Source: Eukaryota sp. TZLM1-RC
Lineage: Eukaryota > Protista > Metamonada: BaSk clade
Length of the DNA: 64,000 nucleotides
Direction of reading: 5' to 3'
Assembly (NCBI GenBank): GCA_040285825.1
Contig: JAUPSS010000007.1
Location: 2,888,689-2,952,688, forward strand
Shown: in pieces, positions 5,048 to 24,600 of the stretch
Numbering within the stretch: position 1 is the first letter of the stretch
Layout of the letters: the number at the start of each line of letters is the position of its first letter
Notes under the pieces: generated by a model
Told to the model about the DNA's origin: nothing
Seen by the model: the letters and a program-made list of their open reading frames with translations, nothing else
Databases searched by the model: none
Made by a program: the position numbers and the translations under genes

Positions 5048-5479
5048 TTAGCTTATATGAGGCCAAAAATCGAGCTCCTCAATCTCCTGGTCAGTTAGAG
5101 GAATCCACTTGCCGGCAAAGGGGATGGCCATACAGTTGACCAGTTTCATGTTCTCTGCACCAAAAGGAACGAATACAAGTGATGCAAGAAAGCCAATGCC
5201 TAATGTGGCATGAACTACAATAACAATGATACCACCAAACAGCACCCAAAGCGCTGTGATGACGGAATACTCTAGTGAATTCCGATCTATCGACTCATCT
5301 AGTATGATTTTCTTGTCAAAGGGCATGAATGCATAGAGAGCAAAATGCCAAATTTTATCAATATGGAAGAATCCAATAACCGTGGAGGCAAATATTATGG
5401 ATGAAAGAATGTACAATATGAATAAGATCCACCCAATGGTAAGTGCCCATGTCCAATTATAGATACGAACCAAGTTCAT
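5048..5479 (-). CDS. YccF-like (inner membrane component, DUF307) two-repeat membrane protein, 143 aa
   Basis: Two repeats fit the YccF pattern: NWTWALTIGW...STVIG...ALYAFMPFDKKI and LWVLFGG...HATLG...VPFGAENMKL...PFAGK. First ATG at 5479. Confidence 0.7.
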   Translation of the reverse strand: MNLVRIYNWTWALTIGWILFILYILSSIIFASTVIGFFHIDKIWHFALYAFMPFDKKIILDESIDRNSLEYSVITALWVLFGGIIVIVVHATLGIGFLASLVFVPFGAENMKLVNCMAIPFAGKWIPLTDQEIEELDFWPHIS

Positions 5480-6945: not shown

Positions 6946-7180
6946 TTTTTTTTATTTAAATTTAATTTTATTCTAAACCTATAAATCAACATCTAAAAAA
7001 ATCCATCTCTCCCAAAACAAAAACACTAGATGCAACTCTCTCATAGTGAGATCCAAGAGAAAGCAAAGCATCAGAAACCATCTTCAACATCCCCTTAAAA
7101 ATAGAAAACACAATTCTATTTTGCCAAAACAATCTGTTGAAATTTCTGCCAGTTCTTCTCTTTACAATCATTTCAAAATC
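6946..7180 (-). mobile_element. Short 5'-truncated family A insertion with 13-bp TSD
   Basis: ORF 6986-7171 is the family A C-terminus. TSD attatttaaaaaa at 6933-6945 and 7181-7193. Confidence 0.88.
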
Positions 7181-7301
7181 ATTATTTAAAAAAGTCAGGT
7201 TTACAATAACTAAAATGAACTTAATTTATTGATTTGTTAATATGCAAAAAATCTGCTACTCTGAGTTTTGAACACCCATATTCCTGAAATGTAATTTTAT
7301 A

Positions 7302-10300
7302 TTATTTCTTCAATGCAATTCCAAGCATTTCCATCAGCTTCTTCCTATCTTCTTTATAACTCAAAGTTGACCATGATTCACCCATCAAAAGATCAGACAC
7401 ATCATCAATCAAATCATTTTGATTGCAGAACCTATCAATCAAATCCTTTAAAAACAGACAAGAGTATAAGTGGTGTACAGCACAGAGACGCACTCTGGGC
7501 ATTTGATGACCAAGTAACAACACTAAACCGCGAATGCAAGGCATTGGTTCTGTTTCGCAAATATTTGTTAGAATTGAACTAATAACTTCAATTTTCGACA
7601 ATTCAGAACATCGAGCAAGTTCTTTTTTTATATAATTCACCAATTCAGAGGCCAAAACTTTATTATTAAATGTGTAGTCTGGTTCCAAAGTACCATTTTC
7701 TAAAAGTAATTTGAAAGTTTTCAACAGAGGCAGAGACAAACGTGGACATTTGATGGACTTGGTCCAAACAGAAAACAAAGAATTAATAAAAATTTCAGAA
7801 TTATCAAAATTTAAAACAGAGATCAGCTTTGAAAATGCAAATTTTGAAATATATTCAGTTTTTGCGCCAACAGAAGTCACAAGACCTCTAGTAACATAAA
7901 AGGAATAGTTCGGGTCAAAAAGTAAGGTCAATAAGGAATCATAATTGAAATCAATTGACCACCCAAAATTCAAGCATTTCAAACAATTCAAGGCCGCTGC
8001 TGACACCTTGGAATTTTTGGAGAAATACTGCTCCAAAACCAGACAGTTAACCAAATTTTGAAATTTTTGATTGAACTGATCTCCTTTTGTCCTGGAGAAG
8101 TTTGTGTAACAATGATGTAAAATTTGCAATACTGACAACCTGACCCAAGAGCCAACATCGCCTCTGTTGTCATTTTGATAGTCTGAGAGACCATCAATCA
8201 AATCAGAAAAGATGATTTCATCAAGGGTCAAAAAAGAGCTCAAGTTGGAAACTGCCTTGACTGCCAAAGACCTGATTAATGGATCAGAAATGGCAGAACT
8301 TGAATTTTTACCAATCATTGATTCATGGCAGTAATCAATCACTTTTGATTGATTACTGATAAGACAGTCAGAATCAATAACAGCAAACAACCTCAAAATA
8401 GAAGCATTTGGTTTAATCAAAAATTGCTCCAAAATTTGAGGAAAAACAAAAGAGAAAATTGACTGAAAAACCATCGAGAGAGAGCATTGAAGATCAGGAT
8501 TTTCAGTCGAAATTAGCGAAAATAACCAATCAATAATGATTGCTGAGGGTTTAATTGAAGATTTGGAGAAGAACACAGTTAAAAAATCACAAAAAGTTCT
8601 TCCCAAGTCTTCGTTGGTCTTGAATATTGACCTTTTGGTAACATCATTCAATGCTGTAGTGATCAAATCAACCACACAATCATCCAAAGTCAACAAATTT
8701 GATTGAATGAGCTGAGAAAGAAGTAATAATGACCCATGAGGTAGTCTTATGTCAAACCTGGAACCTTTTGCTAGATTACTGAATAATAAATCTAAATCAA
8801 AATCAGTAAAAACAATCTTTCTTGCAATCAAAATGATTGATTTAGCAGACAAAACTCTGATAACAGGGTCCCAATGGAAGATTTTCCGATCTAGCAAATG
8901 ATTAATCATGCTAGATCCATAAAAATGATTGGAAAGATGACTAGCTGACGTCATGAATGAATGATTGAGGTTTCCGACCTGCGAGAAATCAGCACTGGTG
9001 ATTATCTCTAAGCCATCCTTAACATTGGCTCTCCCTACAAGTTCTTGGAAAACTGCCGATCCTGCCCTCCTGCAATTAAGATCACGGTCAAAAAGGGTCA
9101 CATTCAGCAAAAATTTGGATATTTTGTCAACAATTTCTTGATCTTTTACCAAAAACTCATTAGCCTTTATCATACACCACAGCACAAAACAAGAAGAATC
9201 ACGAACATTGGAACCTACCCAGCGACCAGATTTTGGTCGCTCAAAATACAGTAAATGGTCAAGAATGGTCTCAAGAAATTCTTTGACTTGAAGATGGGAA
9301 ATTTGATTTGCCCTGATTGATTCAGCTATGGCCAAAAGACATCCGTGGACAACATCATCATCGTTAGAAGTGGAATTTTTGAATACGTGATCAATCAATA
9401 ATTCTCTCAAATTGTAACTATTTTTAGCAACAGTCGACAAAGAGCGAGCAGCAGTCCATCTAATCATGCTCATTGATGATGTTGTGAAGGACAGAATAAA
9501 TTGGAAACAGTTTAAAATGAATTGATGATCAGAAAAGGATCTACTGCAGATGGTAGTCACTAATTCAATTAAAATACACGTAATCAAAGAATTATTAGAA
9601 ATTAAATTATCTTCAAAATTAGATAGAATAGACACTAATTCAAATATTTTAGGAATAAACTCAGAGAAGCAATCTCCATATAACAGAGAAAAATACAAAG
9701 TTCTCATCAGATTCATGAGTAAATTAATAGTAGAAAGGGAACTATCAAACGTGATTGATTGATTGAATGATTGGAAGGTTGCTGGCTTAGAATTATCTTT
9801 CAAAAAGCCAATCAGACTATCAATCAAATTAATGATAACTTCCATCAAATGATTGCCTTCCTTTCTTACCAATAAACGAGCTAAAGCTTCAGCGGCAGGA
9901 ATTTCGGTAATCGAATTTGATAGAAAGGGAAGCAAACAATCAAAAACCTGCTCTGGTGAACAACGGTCAACGCTGGTCAAGGAGAAAGGTTCAAAAAGAA
10001 CACGACTAACCCAGACCAAGACGACATAAAAAACTACTTCTTTGTGTTGACGACTAACTAACACGTTAATCAAGAGATTTAGTTTAGACAAATTACTGGG
10101 AAAATGAGCACACACAGCTTCAACTGAGCAGACTCTCATCAGGAGATTCAAAGCATTGCAATAGCGATCAATCAAATCATTGCAATCTGATTGATTATGA
10201 TTGATTGACTGAGTCAACAATGGGTCAATTTGACTTGTCAAGCTGATGACAATATGCTCAAGGCCTGGTTTGAGCAGGTAACCATGATGTGAGTACTTTC

Positions 10301-11009
10301 CCACAATATTATTAAACTCAATCAAATCAAAATGATTTGATGGGCTTTTTGATTGGCAAATTTGATTTAATTGTTTTAAATCAGAAGCGACAAATAAACC
10401 GTGCTTTGACTCTTCAAGTTCATTCTCATCCAAGATAGGCAAGTCTACAGTAGACAGGTCATTAATCAGCCAATTGATTGCCTCAGAAATTCCTTGACCA
10501 GTCGCTGCCGAAACAGGAAACACCTCCCAATTTCTATTTTTAGTGACACTTGACACATCATCATGAGTCATCAATCCCAATTCCTCTACCACTTCTTCCC
10601 TTGAAAGTGCCCCTGGAAGATCTTGTTTATTAGCTAAGATGAGAAGAGTGCTCCCAATGAGTCTGTCTGAGCGAAGAACTTCCATTAGTTCAGAGAAGCA
10701 CTCGTCTAAGCGGCCAATGTCAAAAGAGTCCAAAACCCAGATAACAGCATCTGTTCTGTCAAAATAAGTTTTCCAGTAAGAGCGTATGGTGGTCTGTCCA
10801 CCAATATCCCAAATATTGAGTTTAAGAGGTGAAGATGGGGGAGAGTAAGTGTGAATATCAAAGCCAAAGGTAGGAGACATTGTGGAAGTATCATGACCAA
10901 ATATAGATTTAACAACTGTTGTTTTTCCAGCAGAGTCCAGTCCGAGCATAAGAACACGCCGCTCACATTCCTGAGACTTAATATGTCGTATAAGTGAGAT
11001 AAGAGACAT
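7302..11009 (-). CDS. ARL2-TBCD: In-frame fusion of ARL2 small GTPase (aa ~1-185) and tubulin-folding cofactor D (aa ~190-1235)
   Basis: Arf-family motifs GLDSAGKTT, SPTFGF, WDIGGQTTIRSYWKTYF, NKQD with the Arl2-type switch II. Then TBCD signatures GSNVRDSSCFVLW, LFDRDLNCRRAGSAVFQELVGR, YQNDNRGDVGSWVR, LLGHQMPRVR. No stop between the two parts. Confidence 0.92.
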   Translation of the reverse strand: MSLISLIRHIKSQECERRVLMLGLDSAGKTTVVKSIFGHDTSTMSPTFGFDIHTYSPPSSPLKLNIWDIGGQTTIRSYWKTYFDRTDAVIWVLDSFDIGRLDECFSELMEVLRSDRLIGSTLLILANKQDLPGALSREEVVEELGLMTHDDVSSVTKNRNWEVFPVSAATGQGISEAINWLINDLSTVDLPILDENELEESKHGLFVASDLKQLNQICQSKSPSNHFDLIEFNNIVGKYSHHGYLLKPGLEHIVISLTSQIDPLLTQSINHNQSDCNDLIDRYCNALNLLMRVCSVEAVCAHFPSNLSKLNLLINVLVSRQHKEVVFYVVLVWVSRVLFEPFSLTSVDRCSPEQVFDCLLPFLSNSITEIPAAEALARLLVRKEGNHLMEVIINLIDSLIGFLKDNSKPATFQSFNQSITFDSSLSTINLLMNLMRTLYFSLLYGDCFSEFIPKIFELVSILSNFEDNLISNNSLITCILIELVTTICSRSFSDHQFILNCFQFILSFTTSSMSMIRWTAARSLSTVAKNSYNLRELLIDHVFKNSTSNDDDVVHGCLLAIAESIRANQISHLQVKEFLETILDHLLYFERPKSGRWVGSNVRDSSCFVLWCMIKANEFLVKDQEIVDKISKFLLNVTLFDRDLNCRRAGSAVFQELVGRANVKDGLEIITSADFSQVGNLNHSFMTSASHLSNHFYGSSMINHLLDRKIFHWDPVIRVLSAKSIILIARKIVFTDFDLDLLFSNLAKGSRFDIRLPHGSLLLLSQLIQSNLLTLDDCVVDLITTALNDVTKRSIFKTNEDLGRTFCDFLTVFFSKSSIKPSAIIIDWLFSLISTENPDLQCSLSMVFQSIFSFVFPQILEQFLIKPNASILRLFAVIDSDCLISNQSKVIDYCHESMIGKNSSSAISDPLIRSLAVKAVSNLSSFLTLDEIIFSDLIDGLSDYQNDNRGDVGSWVRLSVLQILHHCYTNFSRTKGDQFNQKFQNLVNCLVLEQYFSKNSKVSAAALNCLKCLNFGWSIDFNYDSLLTLLFDPNYSFYVTRGLVTSVGAKTEYISKFAFSKLISVLNFDNSEIFINSLFSVWTKSIKCPRLSLPLLKTFKLLLENGTLEPDYTFNNKVLASELVNYIKKELARCSELSKIEVISSILTNICETEPMPCIRGLVLLLGHQMPRVRLCAVHHLYSCLFLKDLIDRFCNQNDLIDDVSDLLMGESWSTLSYKEDRKKLMEMLGIALKK

Positions 11010-11074: not shown

Positions 11075-12190
11075 TTCACTTCATTTGCACTCATCCACAA
11101 CATGAATCATATTAAGAACAGCATTGACATTACGATTCCATAGACATCCACACTTCTTGCAAGTGAGTAATCCATCTCTTAGGACCATTGGAGTCTTTGC
11201 TCTCCTGTAAGGTCTTGGATTAGGTACTCGATGTTTCATTACATTTTCACCTTCTTTTTCCTTGAGTACACATACATGACATCGACAACTTGTTCTATAT
11301 TCATCCAGTAGCAATAAACGGCAGTTGGTTGGTTTCCAATCACCCATTACTACAATGTTATCTTCTGGACCTCCAAACTTATTTTCAAATTCATTCATCC
11401 ATTTTGCTTAAAACCTCTCTGTGGCCATGAATCTTCACAGTTTCATCACTCTTTATTATTCTTTAGTAAAAAGCTCCAATTTGGAGAGAAGAGTTGTTTT
11501 TTTACCTTGCAGTAGTTTAGGAATTTTTCATGTTCCGAGGTTTTTTTGAAAACTGTTTTAATTCTTCTTCCCACTCTTTTACAGTTTTGTTTTGAATAAT
11601 CCATGATTCTTTAGCATTCTTATAGAATTTTTGATGGTCTTTGTTCAGAGTTTCTCTTCTTTGTTGAGGAGCAGTCAACCTCTTGAAGGCATATTCCTTT
11701 AATTTTGTTTTCTTGTTTCAATTTGGAGGAGGATTTTGTTTTTGTTTGAAGTTTAAAATCTTTTGTTTTGTCTTTTTGTCTTGTTCATTCTGTTAATTAA
11801 ACCTCTATTTCTTTCTTTGTTTTCTTCATGACGCCATTCGTCCCATTTTAATCTTGAATCTGTTGGGCTTGAGTGTGGTTCAGTTAACATGTTGGGATTT
11901 GGACAATATAATTTTCAATTCCTAGCCATCAATTGGTCCCAAAATAGTAATGCCAGGGTCAATTACTTTGAAGTTGCAATACATAATAAATAAGCTATAA
12001 TATAAATTCTTAAACAAAAATAAGCATGAAATCAGGTATTCTTGTGGGTTGACTCTTAAACAGTAATTCAATCTTTGAATTTTTTTTAAATAACAAAAAA
12101 ATGGGTTTAGATTTTGATGTAAAATTATAATTCTTGGAAACAACAGTTCTTTGAGGCTGTCAATAATCAAAACTTGATTAGGTAGAGTCA
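11075..12190 (-). pseudogene. Degenerate Fanzor (Fanzor1-like, TnpB-derived RuvC nuclease)
   Basis: Collinear motifs across frames: VNPQEYLISC; RuvC-I VIDPG..L...DG (~11925-11970); FKRLTAPQQRRET...KTVKEWEEEL..F (11520-11700); KFGGPEDNIVVMGDW; DEYRTSCRCHVC; GLLTCKKC..LWNRNVNAVLNM. Confidence 0.8.
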
Positions 12191-17818: not shown

Positions 17819-19036
17819 ATGTCAGTTCTCGATCGACCCGCTGTTGTTATTGATAATGGTACGGGTTATACCAAACTTGGATATGCTGGTCAAAACATTC
17901 CCAATTACATTGTCCCTTCTGCTGTTGCACACAACTTCAAAAAGCCAAGAACAATAACATCAAACTCATTTCCCGATATGGATTTTTTCATCGGCGATGA
18001 AGCTCTCAAGATGGCTCGCACTTATGAAGTGGACTACCCTCTTAAACATGGCCAGATCGAAAACTGGGACATGATGGAAAAGTACTGGCATTCTTGTATG
18101 TTTGACTATCTCCGATGTAACCCTGAAGAACACAACTTTCTTCTCACTGAACCCCCTCTCAACTCACCAGAGAACAGAGAGTACACCGCGGAAGTAATGT
18201 TTGAAACCTTTGGTGTTTCAGGTCTTTATATTGGAGTCCAGGCCGTTCTAGCGCTCTATGGTAATCTTAACCCTGAAGAAAAGGTGCCTATCACCGGAAC
18301 CATCATTGATTCAGGAGATGGTGTCACTCATATCATTCCCATTGTAGAGGGCTATGTCGTTGGCTCTGCTATCAAGCATATTCCTCTTGCTGGCCGTGAC
18401 ATTACTCAGTTCATCGCCAAAATGCTGCGTCATAGAGAAAAGAGCATTCCACCACATGAAGTTAATGCAATGGCAAGTTATGCAAAGGAACGACATTCTT
18501 ATGTATGTGGAGATTTGGCCAAAGAGTTCAACAAATTTGATGACAGACCTGCTGACAAAATCAAACAGCTCACAGGAATTGATTCAGCGTCTGGAAAACA
18601 ATTTGAATTTGACCTTGGCTATGAACGCTTTTTAGGACCAGAGCTGTTTTTTAGACCAGAAATATTCTCCACGCAGTTCACTACTCCCCTGCACGAGCTC
18701 CTTGATCAGTCTATCCAGGCATCCCCTATTGATGCTAGGAGAGCGCTCTATGGAAAAATTTGTTTATCTGGAGGTAGTACCATGTTTCCCAAGTTTGATA
18801 AGAGACTACAACGAGATTTAGCTGGCATTGTAAACCAACGAATGTCTGATATAAGGAAAAGGAGCACTCAGCATGTAGAAGATATTACAGTAAATGTTGA
18901 AACTTCACCTTTTCAGCGGTTCGCTGTTTGGTATGGTGGTTCAAAGATGGCGAGTACCCCAGAGTTTAAACACCATGTTTACACTAAGGCTGATTACGAG
19001 GAACATGGTCCAAAAAGGTTTTACTCTGTTTTATAG
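17819..19036 (+). CDS. ARP3: Actin-related protein 3 (Arp2/3 complex)
   Basis: PAVVIDNGTGYTKLGYAG, DFFIGDEAL, LTEPPLNSPENREYTAEVMFETF, GYERFLGPELFF, QRFAVWYGGS. Intronless, 405 aa. Confidence 0.96.
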   Translation: MSVLDRPAVVIDNGTGYTKLGYAGQNIPNYIVPSAVAHNFKKPRTITSNSFPDMDFFIGDEALKMARTYEVDYPLKHGQIENWDMMEKYWHSCMFDYLRCNPEEHNFLLTEPPLNSPENREYTAEVMFETFGVSGLYIGVQAVLALYGNLNPEEKVPITGTIIDSGDGVTHIIPIVEGYVVGSAIKHIPLAGRDITQFIAKMLRHREKSIPPHEVNAMASYAKERHSYVCGDLAKEFNKFDDRPADKIKQLTGIDSASGKQFEFDLGYERFLGPELFFRPEIFSTQFTTPLHELLDQSIQASPIDARRALYGKICLSGGSTMFPKFDKRLQRDLAGIVNQRMSDIRKRSTQHVEDITVNVETSPFQRFAVWYGGSKMASTPEFKHHVYTKADYEEHGPKRFYSVL

Positions 19037-21609: not shown

Positions 21610-24600
21610 AAAATTGTATTTATTGAATTTGCACACTTGATTAAATTAAATCATAACTAATGGGACGACTATCATTAAACCAAGATTTCCTCTACAAAAT
21701 CTTGTTCTGCTTGCTGTCTAGCTAAAGCTTCTCTAATTCGATTGAAAAACCGCGGTAATCTATTAATAATGGCAAATTGAATCCGTGAACGCCATAAAAA
21801 AAATATCAAATCTTTTCATTGTTTTTTCTTTCACCATTTTTTGGAAGTCATCCAAAAAAGTTTCTGCTTCAACTGATAATCTTCCATTTATCGAAAATGG
21901 GAAAGCAATAAAAACCAGCTGTGTATTTCTATCGACATTTGCATCTTCAATTTCTTTATCATATTTTCTATGTTTTTCTTTTGCTTTAAAATCCAGAGCA
22001 GCCACAGGATTAAGTTTTCTTCTGTGAACCAAAGTATCGTTTGCAACATTACATGAGACAAAGTCAACAATAGCTTCAGAATTATCAATCCAATCACAGT
22101 ATACATCACCTCTATCATCAGAACCAAAATTATTCAGAGAAAGTGTTTCCTTCAGCAGGGGCTCTTTGATACACGATATCCTTGCAGTTTGTGCCATATT
22201 GAAAACAGTGTCTCTAACAGCATCATGTAATGAAGAACGATAAGTTATCAATTTAGAGCAATTTAGAGCATGGCGCAAAGTGAGTTGAGGTGAATTCGAA
22301 CAAATACATCTTTCTTTTGATAATAATTGGTTAATGGGGATGTTCAAATATAATCTCATTTTTGTTACAAATGCTTCATTAGTGGCACAAAATGCAAATC
22401 TTCGTGGTACAATGGCTACAAAAAGTGAAGAATCTGACGACCTATTTTCACAAACACCCCTTTCCAATAACAATGAGTGAAGATCTTGATTTAAAACAGC
22501 TGAGCTGCATATATTATTATAAAGATCATTTTCATACATTCCAGTCAATCTTTTCTGTAATGTTCGAAGAGTGTACTTCAAATTTAAAACATTTTTTTCT
22601 GGAATATTGCCATTGAATGATTGGGGAAAACATCGACCCCATTTTTCTACATCAATTCTTGAAATTTCTTCATTTAATGCAAAAACAGTGGAACTTTGCG
22701 TTGTCATCAATAAATCTTCCCAATCTGCAAATCTTTCGGAAAACTCAAAGATTGAATTTCTGCATCCACCAACAAAAGCACACGAGGTAAGAATAGAAGC
22801 CTTCGTCCACCCTAAACCACCATAATGTGGACTAAGGTAAGCATGATCTGGAATTTGAAACATTTTACATCCCAGTAATTGAGACAGAACTTTTGCACGT
22901 AACTCATTAAACTTTTGAGCCAAAGGTCTAGTGATGAGAGGATTTGTAGATCGAAATATATGATTAAAATTGGAACTAAAACACAGTCTTATAATGGTAA
23001 ATTTGATGTGTTTTTTTATATCTAAATTCATCATTCGGTCAATTTTGTCAGAAATTGAGTTCAACTTTTCAAACAATTTTTTGGTAATTTCATCATTATT
23101 TCCTCAAAACGAACCCAAATGACGAATAGCATCAATTGAATATAATTTGGCTTGAATTTCAATACCATCAATTATTGTGGAAACTGGAGAATTCGATAAC
23201 AAAACACATTTAAGTAAATTAAGTCGGAGACCAATATTGGTAAATAATTCTTTAAAACATACAGTTGCTTTTTTCACAATATTTAAATCACCAATAAGCA
23301 CAACATCATCCATATATGCAATCATTTTTAGTGAAGGAAACATCTCTTGAATTTGCAGTAGAATAGGATGAATGGCCAAACAAAACAAAAGAGGTCCTAA
23401 CGGATCTCCTTGCTTTACGCCACTTGATGAACTCAAAATGTTGTTACCAAAATGTAAATTAGAATATGTGCAATATGTTGATTGAAAATATGGTATTAAT
23501 TCCGGCATATATTGCAATAGAGCACCATGGATACTGCGACGACTTAGTGAATTGAAAGCATTACTAAAATCCAATGACATGCAAACATTGGATTCATTTT
23601 GACGAAATAAGACATCAGTAGCAAAAATCGCTAAAGAGACTCCATCTGTAGTATTTATACCATATTGAAAGGGTAATAAAATCTTTTTAGCTTTTTCATT
23701 GAACCTGCTTAAGCAACACGCAGAAAAAATATTGTGTAAGCTCTCAGAGACTGCAATAGGACGAACATCCATTTTTGAATTTTTGACAAGTGCAGTCAAA
23801 CGAGAACTTCTTAATTCTTCTGGGTATTTGAGTTGACCAGATAATATTTGGTTGAAAAATTTGGTCAATAAACCAAGGCAATCTTCTGAAGAAATAATTG
23901 CGGCTTTTACATGATCAAGAGTAATACCAGAAAGTCCGGCAGACTTACCACGTGGTCTCTTTTTGATAACCGAAAAAACTTCTGATGGCATCAATGGATA
24001 ATTTTCCCAGTATGTGCCGTAAAAATTTTGATCCATTATAGGGTCTTCATAAGGATGAAGTATTTTTAGTTTATCTATTGTATTTTCATTGTTGGGTGCT
24101 TTAACTCCGGGACTTAAAGCTGACAAAGCCTTGGACCATTTGTTGTCAAAGCATTTGTCTTCAAAAATTTTACTTAATTTCTCGGATGACTGATTTCTCG
24201 GTGCTATATTAGTTAAATCTTCGGAAATATTAACGAAATTTTGTTCAAAAGGAGGACAAAAGAACCAAAAAATTCCCAAATAATATTGATAGCATACTTT
24301 CCTTTACATAATTGATCCAAAAATCTTTGAAAAACGAAAGCAAATTCATTGCATTTGGTCGGATGAATTTCTTGAGGTATTCTTATAGGAGGATGGTAGT
24401 TATCAACTATGCGGCATTTCAAGCAGCGGTCAGAAGTTTTTCCTTTTGCATTTTTTCTAAAAGAAATACCACAAGTGTTGCAAGTTTTGTGCTTTAATCG
24501 GTTGCAAACTGGTTTTGCAACAATTTGTGGAGCATTATTTATGGGTTCTACCTTAGACTCTTTCCTTCTAATAAATTTTCTTTTACATTTTGTTTCAGAA

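What the first reader, a model, noticed from the sequence alone, without database searches (positions are those of the whole stretch)
7302..11009. Natural ARL2-TBCD fusion: a GTPase joined to its own effector in one polypeptide
Seen: one stop-free 1235-aa ORF with a complete Arl2 G-domain, a short acidic linker (WLINDLSTVDLPILDENELEESK) and a near full-length cofactor D. Position 2 is Ser rather than the Arf-family Gly. Established: Arl2 binds TBCD, and together with TBCE forms the tubulin chaperone complex; free excess TBCD destroys microtubules unless Arl2 restrains it. Inference: the fusion fixes 1:1 stoichiometry and may cut Arl2 off from its other partners (PDE-delta/UNC119, BART). I know of no described natural fusion but cannot search for one.
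Basis: partly seen in the sequence, partly recalled or inferred. Interest (0 to 1): 0.88.

Follow-up and report, generated by a model that had tools for sequence, protein, structure and literature searches.

The report
Arl2 GTPase fused to TBCD
A free-living anaerobic flagellate encodes the small GTPase Arl2 and its tubulin-chaperone partner TBCD as one protein; the same fusion occurs in three related species, so it is a real, conserved but apparently undescribed single-chain form of a complex that other eukaryotes build from two proteins.

Summary
Window 7302-11009 (-) is one stop-free 1235-aa ORF. Residues 1-187 are a complete Arl2 with all G motifs and the N-terminal helix. Residues about 194-1235 are a full-length TBCD. 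It is not an artefact: the public annotation of this assembly (GCA_040285825.1, most likely Skoliomonas litria) calls the identical product. The same Arl2-then-TBCD architecture, joined at the same point, occurs in Skoliomonas sp. RCL, Skoliomonas sp. GEM-RC1 and Carpediemonas membranifera. An exhaustive HMMER search of 1.84 billion representative proteins found no other carrier.

One refinement: the "acidic linker" is not an added linker. It aligns with the conserved acidic N-terminal motif of stand-alone TBCDs. Canonical Arl2 ends exactly where it begins, so the join is head-to-tail with a tether of about 12-17 residues.

Most likely function: a covalent D+G module of the TBC-DEG tubulin chaperone. 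Arl2 is at the N-terminus, so its helix stays free to insert into the TBCD turret.

Not tested here: transcription across the junction (no RNA runs), cis docking (no model coordinates), and whether a free Arl2 persists.

No paper describing the fusion was found. Verdict: a new variant of a known system, of moderate interest.

The parts
7302..11009 (-). Whole Arl2-TBCD fusion gene: single exon, 1235 codons plus stop
   Evidence: ORF, translation, both domain sets in Pfam, identical 1235-aa product called in the public annotation of GCA_040285825.1
10449..11009 (-). Arl2 moiety, aa 1-187 (N-terminal helix plus Arf-type G domain)
   Evidence: Pfam Arf 1e-53. PDB sequence hits rank Arl2 171 bits > Arl3 156/140 > Arl1 134 > Arf1 122. 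Every named hit among the best 120 is annotated Arl2, 43-52% identity. Model 15-188 aligns to Arl2 1ksh_A, Z 25.9, rmsd 1.4
10959..11009 (-). Arl2 N-terminal helix region, aa 1-17 (Ser at position 2)
   Evidence: Aligns with the N-termini of canonical Arl2. DSSP helix 3-10 in the model. In solved TBC-DEG this helix is encircled by the TBCD turret (PMC12881605)
10917..10943 (-). G1 P-loop GLDSAGKTT (aa 23-31)
   Evidence: Coordinates checked. G23, L24, D25, A27, G28, K29 and T31 are invariant in all four fused proteins
10794..10808 (-). G3 DIGGQ with the catalytic Gln72
   Evidence: D68, I69, G70, G71, Q72 invariant
10620..10631 (-). G4 NKQD (aa 127-130)
   Evidence: N127, K128, D130 invariant
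10497..10511 (-). G5 SAATG (aa 167-171)
   Evidence: S167, A168 invariant
10398..10448 (-). Junction/tether, aa 188-204: the Arl2 C-terminal tail runs straight into the TBCD N-terminus
   Evidence: Canonical Arl2 proteins end at the position of L193-D194. The model has coil only at 188-194 and a helix from 195. The first residue aligned to solved TBCD is 199-207
10404..10430 (-). Acidic motif DENELEESK (aa 194-202): the conserved N-terminal motif of TBCD, not an added linker
   Evidence: Aligns with GEDDEHESK, EDDDEHDSK, QEEDELESK and similar motifs near the N-terminus of stand-alone TBCDs. Register confirmed by hhalign, P 99.8%, E 5e-30
7305..10430 (-). TBCD moiety, aa 194-1235 (HEAT solenoid: turret plus spiral)
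   Evidence: PDB sequence hit to TBCD 9m1i_D, 174 bits. Foldseek TM 0.53-0.63. VIA-align Z 27-33 over model 204-1197 vs human 27-1150
9024..9515 (-). ARM_TBCD_2nd domain (aa 499-662), the best-conserved TBCD block
   Evidence: Pfam 3e-29, coordinates checked
7593..7943 (-). TFCD_C domain (aa 1023-1139)
   Evidence: Pfam 2.5e-16, coordinates checked

Best explanation
The gene encodes a single-chain version of the Arl2-TBCD pair that forms the core of the tubulin chaperone TBC-DEG. A complete, switch-competent Arl2 sits at the N-terminus. Its natural C-terminal end is joined, with essentially no added linker, to the natural N-terminus of a complete TBCD.

Shown here: the ORF, both complete moieties, the intact G motifs, the position of the join, and its conservation in three Skoliomonas species and Carpediemonas.

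Inferred: Arl2 folds first, and its free N-terminal helix is then enclosed by the TBCD turret formed just downstream. The G domain rests on the first HEAT repeats, as in the solved complexes. The tether of about 12-17 residues only makes permanent a contact that is already constitutive.

The expected result is obligatory 1:1 stoichiometry and co-translational assembly. No free TBCD would exist, which matters because free TBCD destroys microtubules when in excess. Arl2's GTP cycle would be retained for TBCC-driven tubulin dimer assembly and release. The fused Arl2 copy is then unlikely to serve other Arl2 partners.
For: - One ORF with both Pfam domain sets.
- The public annotation of the same assembly calls the identical 1235-aa product.
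- The same architecture is found in Skoliomonas sp. RCL (1296 aa, one ORF), Skoliomonas sp. GEM-RC1 (junction in one frame) and Carpediemonas membranifera (1466 aa, one ORF).
- The junction is in the same place in all four.
- P-loop, switch-I Thr, DIGGQ, NKxD and SA are invariant across the four.
- The G domain is Arl2-like rather than Arl3, Arl1 or Arf.
- TBCD is complete from its N-terminus, and the acidic stretch is TBCD's own motif.
- Published structures show the TBCD turret H1-H13 encircling the Arl2 N-helix, with the G domain touching the turns of H1-H3, H5, H6, H8 and H10 (PMC12881605). TBCD-TBCE-Arl2 is a stoichiometric heterotrimer (PMC4574351 abstract).
- Arl2-first order keeps the N-helix free, as that geometry requires.
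Against: - No RNA run was available, and no read contig bridges the junction.
- One low-depth contig of run X2 leaves the window sequence at 10383/10384, seven codons past the motif. This is unexplained.
- Cis docking could not be measured because model coordinates and PAE are not returned.
- The model is weak for aa 300-470, and the N-helix has pLDDT of only 55-75. This is partly because MAFFT misplaced the stand-alone TBCD N-termini in the input alignment.
- Taheri et al. report that tags or truncations at the subunit termini disrupt reconstitution, so compatibility of a join at these termini is inferred from conservation, not shown.
- TBCE and TBCC were not looked for in this genome.
Confidence: 0.75

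Rival explanations
1. The fused G domain is a dedicated paralogue ('Arl2b' type), and a free, canonical Arl2 still exists in these organisms. The fusion would then fix the stoichiometry of the chaperone but would not cut the cell's Arl2 functions off from PDE-delta, UNC119, BART or mitochondria.
For: Giardia muris has a stand-alone protein that its annotators named Arl2b, which implies a second Arl2. It groups with the Skoliomonas fused G domains, though weakly (81/62, long branches). The fused G domains sit on a long, well-supported branch (100/99), as expected of a specialised copy.
Against: No stand-alone Arl2 from Skoliomonas or Carpediemonas appeared in any list. That is uninformative, because the listed cut-off (182 bits) lies above the score of G. 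muris Arl2b itself (171 bits), and 50% clustering would hide a canonical copy. Scan notes on this genome mention no other Arl2, which is also weak evidence.
Confidence: 0.35
2. Skoliomonas and Carpediemonas fused Arl2 to TBCD independently (convergent Rosetta-stone events), rather than inheriting one fusion from the common ancestor of Fornicata and the barthelonid-skoliomonad clade.
For: Carpediemonas is not resolved with the Skoliomonas fused G domains in the Arl2 tree. Giardia, inside Fornicata, has a stand-alone Arl2. Because the join is simply end-to-start, the shared 'linker' motif is TBCD's own and is not evidence of common origin.
Against: The domain order and junction position are the same in all four. 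The G. muris Arl2b tail aligns with the TBCD N-terminal acidic motif, which canonical Arl2 proteins lack. That fits a later fission of an ancestral fusion. No fusion was seen anywhere else among 1.84 billion representatives, so the event is rare.
Confidence: 0.25
3. The long ORF is translated as a precursor or from two starts, and the cell actually holds separate Arl2 and TBCD proteins, by cleavage in the tether or by internal initiation.
For: Nothing direct. The tether is the only low-confidence coil between the two folded parts.
Against: There is no Met in roughly the first 90 residues after the junction. The tether is very short and consists of conserved termini of the two parts. The architecture has been kept across deep divergence (24-45% identity).
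Confidence: 0.07
4. Assembly or annotation artefact: two adjacent genes merged by a sequencing error that removed a stop codon.
For: The assembly is nanopore-based. The GEM-RC1 orthologue does show frame breaks at homopolymers.
Against: Four independent assemblies have the junction in frame at the same position. Errors would break ORFs, not create a 1235-codon one. Short-read contigs that lie on the gene match it exactly where they cover it (records 2-5, 13, 14).
Confidence: 0.03

Closest known systems
TBCD-Arl2 core of the TBC-DEG tubulin chaperone (yeast Cin1-Cin4-Pac2, PDB 9EDT/9EDR; human TBCD-ARL2, PDB 9M1I-9M1N)
   Same: Both components are present and complete. The Arl2 N-helix and all G motifs are kept. 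The TBCD HEAT solenoid aligns over its whole length with the solved chains.
   Different: Here the two are one polypeptide, with the Arl2 C-terminus joined to the TBCD N-terminus. In all characterised systems they are separate gene products. Sequence identity is low: about 20% to human TBCD and about 50% to Arl2.
Uncharacterised database entries with the same architecture: Skoliomonas sp. RCL KAL0228386.1, Skoliomonas sp. GEM-RC1 KAL0240916.1 (plus two adjacent gene calls), Carpediemonas membranifera KAG9393108.1 (UniProt A0A8J6B0R9)
   Same: Arl2 first, TBCD second, join at the same alignment position, acidic TBCD N-motif, invariant G motifs.
   Different: Identity to the window protein is 37%, 45% (over the part called) and 24%. 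Carpediemonas keeps Gly2 and has long insertions. The GEM-RC1 gene is split into three frames in its assembly. They are named only 'hypothetical protein' or 'Small GTPase superfamily ARF/SAR type'.
Other multidomain ARF-family proteins (TRIM23, Arl13 variants, Arl17, VPS9-Arf and others; Vargova et al. 2021, PMC8358228)
   Same: An Arf-type G domain joined to further domains in lineage-specific genes.
   Different: That survey of 114 species lists no Arl2-TBCD combination. In those cases the partner domain is not the GTPase's own known stoichiometric scaffold.
Giardia muris 'Arl2b' (TNJ30236.1)
   Same: It is the closest stand-alone relative found within the fornicate/skoliomonad group. It carries a C-terminal acidic tail that aligns with the TBCD N-motif at the fusion junction.
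   Different: It is 199 aa with no TBCD attached. The two downstream genes show no TBCD similarity.

Membership tests
Arl2 (ARF family small GTPase) | Arf-family G domain with G1-G5 motifs and catalytic Gln | tested here: met
   Pfam Arf E 1e-53. GLDSAGKTT, T47, DIGGQ, NKQD and SAATG are present and invariant among the four fused proteins
Arl2 (ARF family small GTPase) | Closer to Arl2 than to Arl3, Arl1 or Arf1 | tested here: met
   PDB scores: Arl2 171/170 bits, Arl3 156/140, Arl1 134, Arf1 122. Every named hit among the best 120 database hits is annotated Arl2. The tree had no Arl3 rows, so clade membership was not tested by phylogeny
Arl2 (ARF family small GTPase) | N-terminal helix that inserts into the TBCD turret | tested here: inconclusive
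   The helix is present by alignment and in the model. Its insertion into the turret could not be examined because no coordinates are returned, and its pLDDT is only 55-75
Arl2 (ARF family small GTPase) | GTP binding and TBCC-stimulated hydrolysis | not testable with these tools
   Biochemical property
TBCD (tubulin-specific chaperone D) | TBCD-specific Pfam domains | tested here: met
   ARM_TBCD_2nd 3e-29 and TFCD_C 2.5e-16, both above the curated cut-offs. ARM_TBCD is also on record for the public product
TBCD (tubulin-specific chaperone D) | Full-length HEAT solenoid (turret plus spiral) matching solved TBCD | tested here: met
   VIA-align Z 27-33, model 204-1197 vs human 27-1150. Z 24-26 vs yeast 1-994. 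N-terminal register by hhalign, P 99.8%. Model confidence is low for aa 300-470
TBCD (tubulin-specific chaperone D) | Binds beta-tubulin and TBCE | not testable with these tools
   Biochemical property. TBCE and TBCC genes were not searched for in this genome
TBC-DEG chaperone system | Arl2 docked on the TBCD turret (here in cis) | not testable with these tools
   Structure prediction returns no coordinates or PAE. Feasibility is argued only from the tether length (12-17 aa) and the published H1-H3 contacts
TBC-DEG chaperone system | TBCE and TBCC present in the same genome | not tested
   Only the 64-kb window can be read. Scan notes hold nothing on them
Conserved ('Rosetta-stone') gene fusion | Same fused architecture and junction in independent genomes | tested here: met
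   Four assemblies, junction aligned
Conserved ('Rosetta-stone') gene fusion | Transcribed and translated as one unit | not testable with these tools
   No RNA runs were served. The only support is that RNA-seq-guided public gene models call one product

The most novel reading that the evidence does not exclude
The fusion arose once, before Fornicata and the barthelonid-skoliomonad clade diverged, in a lineage where Arl2 became wholly dedicated to tubulin biogenesis with no free Arl2. This would go together with the extreme reduction of mitochondrion-related organelles, which would remove Arl2's mitochondrial role. Diplomonads later split the gene again, leaving the TBCD N-terminal acidic motif as a scar on Giardia Arl2b. 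It would be a natural experiment showing which Arl2 functions a eukaryote can do without. It would also show that the Arl2 C-terminus and TBCD N-terminus can be joined although artificial tags at these termini break the complex.
Probability: 0.2. Interest if true: 0.7.

Novelty: new variant of a known kind. Interest (0 to 1): 0.55.

Why it matters
Arl2 and TBCD are essential in most eukaryotes, and mutations in them cause human neurodevelopmental disease. How tightly the GTPase is coupled to its scaffold has been debated since 2000.

- A fusion kept across deeply diverged protists is independent, evolutionary evidence that the two act as an obligate 1:1 unit.
- It supports the Arl2-first geometry of the cryo-EM structures, in which the N-helix is enclosed by the turret and the G domain sits on the first HEAT repeats.
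- It predicts that the Arl2 C-terminus and TBCD N-terminus lie within reach of a tether of about 15 residues.
- It offers a ready-made single-chain construct. TBCD is otherwise hard to produce without co-expressed Arl2.
- It raises a testable question: have these organisms, which have minimal mitochondrion-related organelles, given up the non-tubulin roles of Arl2?
- It adds a case to the catalogue of multidomain ARF-family proteins in which the added part is the GTPase's own known partner.

Tried and rejected
- Reads: only four low-depth DNA runs were served.
- The search for homologous proteins with alignment A1 was swamped by Arf-family words and even missed Carpediemonas. It is not informative for distribution.
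- The Arl2-domain search cannot show absence of a free metamonad Arl2, because its display cut-off lies above the score of G. muris Arl2b.
- I tested whether the genes downstream of G. muris Arl2b are a hidden TBCD. Pfam, BLASTP and hhalign were all negative.
- Metagenome scan: 80 Arl2-like loci, none with TBCD similarity in its flanks.
- Structure: the model gives folds but no coordinates, so cis docking stayed untested.
- MAFFT alignments A2 and A5 placed the N-terminal ~150 aa of stand-alone TBCDs on the Arl2 columns. A5 was therefore discarded, the second folding job was not run, and the N-terminal third of the model is treated with caution. The register was settled by hhalign of separate alignments instead.
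- The search of earlier findings by sequence and by words gave nothing on other Arl2, TBCD, TBCE or TBCC genes.
- Literature: no paper describes the fusion. The paper behind PDB 9M1I-9M1N is not in the library.
Full report
**Observation.** The window holds one ORF at 7302..11009 on the minus strand: 1235 codons, starting at the first possible start codon after the upstream stop (translation). With the ORF's own base composition (36% G+C), the chance of 1235 codons without a stop is about 1e-36. Pfam finds an Arf-family G domain at aa 5-184 (E 1e-53). It also finds two TBCD-specific domains, ARM_TBCD_2nd at 499-662 and TFCD_C at 1023-1139, both above their curated cut-offs.

**Source and gene model.** An exact look-up finds this 1235-aa product called as a single gene on a 3.2-Mb contig of NCBI assembly GCA_040285825.1. 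That accession lies between those of Skoliomonas sp. RCL (GCA_040285805.1) and Skoliomonas sp. GEM-RC1 (GCA_040285855.1). The scan counts 16 pieces for this genome. This matches the 16-contig, 31.9-Mb, 55%-repetitive first genome column of Table 1 in Williams et al. 2024, which I take to be Skoliomonas litria (PMC11316075). The window is therefore most likely from S. litria; this is an inference and was not verified. That paper's gene models were RNA-seq-guided, which gives mild support for a single transcript.

**Is the fusion real?** An exhaustive HMMER search with aa 1-1200 against 1.84 billion representative proteins put three proteins with both halves at or near the top. Pfam, source names and a local phmmer scan of every protein fetched up to that point confirmed them:
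- KAL0228386.1 of Skoliomonas sp. RCL: 1296 aa, 37% identity end to end, one ORF at L003 8001-11891.
- KAL0240916.1 of Skoliomonas sp. GEM-RC1: 529 aa, comprising Arl2 plus the first part of TBCD.
- KAG9393108.1 of Carpediemonas membranifera: 1466 aa, one ORF at L002 6001-10401, annotated only as 'Small GTPase superfamily ARF/SAR type'.

In GEM-RC1 the rest of TBCD follows directly as two more gene calls. tblastn shows one collinear gene in three frames. The first break is at a run of seven T, as expected of nanopore indels. The Arl2-TBCD junction itself is in one frame.

No other protein among the fetched hits combines the two domains. A fusion would have scored at the top of the exhaustive search because the scores of its two halves add. 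A scan of JGI metagenome contigs gave 80 Arl2-like loci. None has TBCD similarity in its flanks, and 18 of the best 29 have at least 1.5 kb downstream. The architecture is therefore real and conserved. As far as these libraries reach, it is confined to skoliomonads and Carpediemonas, two branches of Metamonada that Williams et al. place as sister groups (Fornicata and the barthelonid-skoliomonad clade).

**The Arl2 half.**
- By sequence it is closest to solved Arl2 (171 and 170 bits), ahead of Arl3 (156, 140), Arl1 (134) and Arf1 (122).
- Every named hit among the best 120 database hits to aa 1-190 is annotated as Arl2, at 43-52% identity.
- The model of aa 15-188 superposes on Arl2 (1ksh_A) with Z 25.9 and rmsd 1.4 Å.
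- The P-loop, the switch-I Thr, DIGGQ with the catalytic Gln, NKxD and SA are invariant in all four fused proteins. The domain is a working switch, not a decayed one.
- The N-terminal helix is kept.
- Position 2 is Ser or Thr in the three Skoliomonas species but Gly in Carpediemonas. From general knowledge, Arl2 is not myristoylated despite its Gly2. In the complex the helix is buried in TBCD, so this change has no obvious consequence.

**The TBCD half and the 'linker'.** The AF2 model has mean pLDDT 84 and pTM 0.65. It matches the cryo-EM chains of human TBCD with TM 0.53-0.63. VIA-align gives Z 27-33 over model 204-1197 against human residues 27-1150. Against yeast TBCD residues 1-994 it gives Z 25.7, and against 4-1011 Z 23.9.

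I then compared two profiles: the fused N-terminal segments, and the N-terminal parts of 37 stand-alone TBCDs. They align in register, columns 46-364 to 46-386 (probability 99.8%, E 5e-30). TBCD is therefore complete to within about a dozen residues of its native start.

Canonical Arl2 proteins end at exactly the position of L193-D194. The acidic stretch that follows (DENELEESK, aa 194-202) aligns with a conserved acidic motif near the N-terminus of stand-alone TBCDs from plants and other eukaryotes, such as GEDDEHESK, EDDDEHDSK, QEEDELESK and IKDDEMPSN.

So the 'short acidic linker' is TBCD's own N-terminal motif, and the join is head-to-tail. The model shows coil only at aa 188-194 and a helix from 195. 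Between the last residue aligned to Arl2 (188) and the first aligned to TBCD (199-207) lie about 12-17 residues.

**How it most likely works.** Established from the literature:
- The TBCD turret (HEAT repeats 1-13) encircles the Arl2 N-terminal helix. The G domain rests on the turns of repeats 1, 2, 3, 5, 6, 8 and 10.
- TBCC engages GTP-bound Arl2 (abstract).
- Arl2 regulates the interaction of cofactor D with native tubulin (PMC2174823).

Inferred: in the fused protein Arl2 emerges first from the ribosome and folds. The turret is made immediately after it and closes round the free N-helix. The short tether then holds the G domain on repeats 1-3, where it sits anyway.

A tether of 12-17 residues can span roughly 40-55 Å, which is about the width of the G domain. 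Geometry is therefore unlikely to forbid this arrangement. The reverse order, TBCD then Arl2, would block the N-helix and is not observed.

Expected consequences are fixed 1:1 stoichiometry, no free TBCD, and a fused Arl2 copy that is rarely available to other partners. None of these functional steps was tested.

**What could not be tested.**
- Only four low-depth DNA runs were served, and no contig bridges 10398-10448.
- Where short contigs lie on the gene they agree with it exactly (table 8).
- One contig of run X2 follows the window from 10234 to 10383 and then continues for 91 letters that are not in the window. The matched part is single-copy in the window. This may be a chimeric low-depth unitig or foreign DNA admitted at the 85% threshold. 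A second allele or locus cannot be excluded, and I leave it unexplained.
- Model coordinates are not returned, so docking in cis was not measured.
- The MAFFT alignment fed to AF2 had put the N-terminal ~150 residues of stand-alone TBCDs on the Arl2 columns. This explains the low confidence for aa 300-470. A second alignment had the same fault and was discarded.

**One origin or two, and is there a free Arl2?** In a tree of Arl2 G domains the three Skoliomonas copies form a clade (100/99). Carpediemonas is unresolved. A stand-alone Giardia muris protein annotated 'Arl2b' joins the Skoliomonas clade weakly (81/62), with a long-branch warning.

That Giardia protein has a 12-residue acidic tail beyond the canonical Arl2 end. 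The tail aligns with the TBCD N-motif at the fusion junction. Its downstream neighbours show no TBCD similarity. This fits a fission of an ancestral fusion in diplomonads. However, the motif is short and acidic, so I rate it as suggestive only.

Whether skoliomonads keep a second, free Arl2 is open. The lists I could obtain would not have shown one (see Tried and rejected).

**Comparison with what is known.** The system is the TBCD-Arl2 core of TBC-DEG, and both parts pass the membership tests that could be run. What is new is the covalent join. The eukaryote-wide ARF-family survey, which devotes a section to multidomain members, lists no such combination and mentions TBCD only in its references (PMC8358228). 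Searches for Arl2 with TBCD and 'fusion' or 'fused', with Carpediemonas, or with Giardia found no description. Taheri et al. note that tags or truncations at the subunit termini disrupt reconstitution. That makes a naturally tolerated join of the Arl2 C-terminus to the TBCD N-terminus informative. The proteins themselves are already in public databases under uninformative names.

**Verdict.** This is a genuine, conserved Arl2-TBCD single-chain gene: a new variant of a known system, apparently undescribed. Interest is moderate (0.55). It is not a new mechanism, but it is a clean natural Rosetta-stone case for an essential chaperone. It makes concrete, testable structural and evolutionary predictions.

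Noticed in passing
window 11081-11398 (-), repeats to about 11330: The ORF 72 bp upstream of the fusion's ATG carries a Cas12f1-like TNB domain (Pfam E 3e-6), consistent with the scan's note of a Fanzor/TnpB relic. Read contigs here are multi-copy and diverged, with many variant letters and a 62-nt skip at 11204-11267.
   Followed up: partly
window 7000-7190: The stretch just 3' of the gene's stop codon is a high-copy repeat in the read sets (summed contig depth 436 and 201, against 2-5 over the gene). Several contigs leave the window sequence at 7088, 7126 and 7180-7182.
   Followed up: no
window 10234-10384: One contig of run X2 (depth 6.7) matches up to 10383 and then continues for 91 nt of sequence that is absent from the window. 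The break is at codon 209 of the fusion, just past the junction. It could be a chimeric unitig, foreign DNA or another allele or locus.
   Followed up: partly
L001 8232-12082 (Skoliomonas sp. GEM-RC1): The orthologous fusion gene is annotated as three separate genes because the assembly changes frame twice. The first break is at a T7 homopolymer (9585-9591), so it is probably an uncorrected nanopore indel rather than a pseudogene.
   Followed up: partly
L004 8001-8600 (Giardia muris): The stand-alone 'Arl2b' ends in an acidic tail (RIDDDDLETAAWK) that canonical Arl2 proteins lack. The tail aligns with the N-terminal acidic motif of TBCD, so it may be a scar of gene fission. The downstream 157-aa and 1382-aa genes have no Pfam hit and no TBCD similarity.
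   Followed up: partly
P0002 (Aphanomyces stellatus, 821 aa), P0169 (Phytophthora citrophthora, 1550 aa), P0171 (Mnemiopsis leidyi, 597 aa): These are other long gene models with a bona fide Arl2 domain at one end and unrelated sequence attached. None has TBCD. They may be merged gene models or further Arl2 fusions.
   Followed up: no
window 17819-19036 (+) and 23104-24279 (-): There is an uninterrupted actin ORF (Pfam E 3e-83), in line with an intron-poor genome. There is also a reverse-transcriptase ORF (RVT_1, E 3e-19) belonging to one of the many retroelements. Seven other ORFs of 329-512 aa have no Pfam match.
   Followed up: no
window about 5048-5479 (L085 8531-8962): The public annotation also calls the 143-aa YccF-family protein (PF03733) downstream of the fusion gene. 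The scan had flagged it as a bacterial-type protein in a eukaryote.
   Followed up: no
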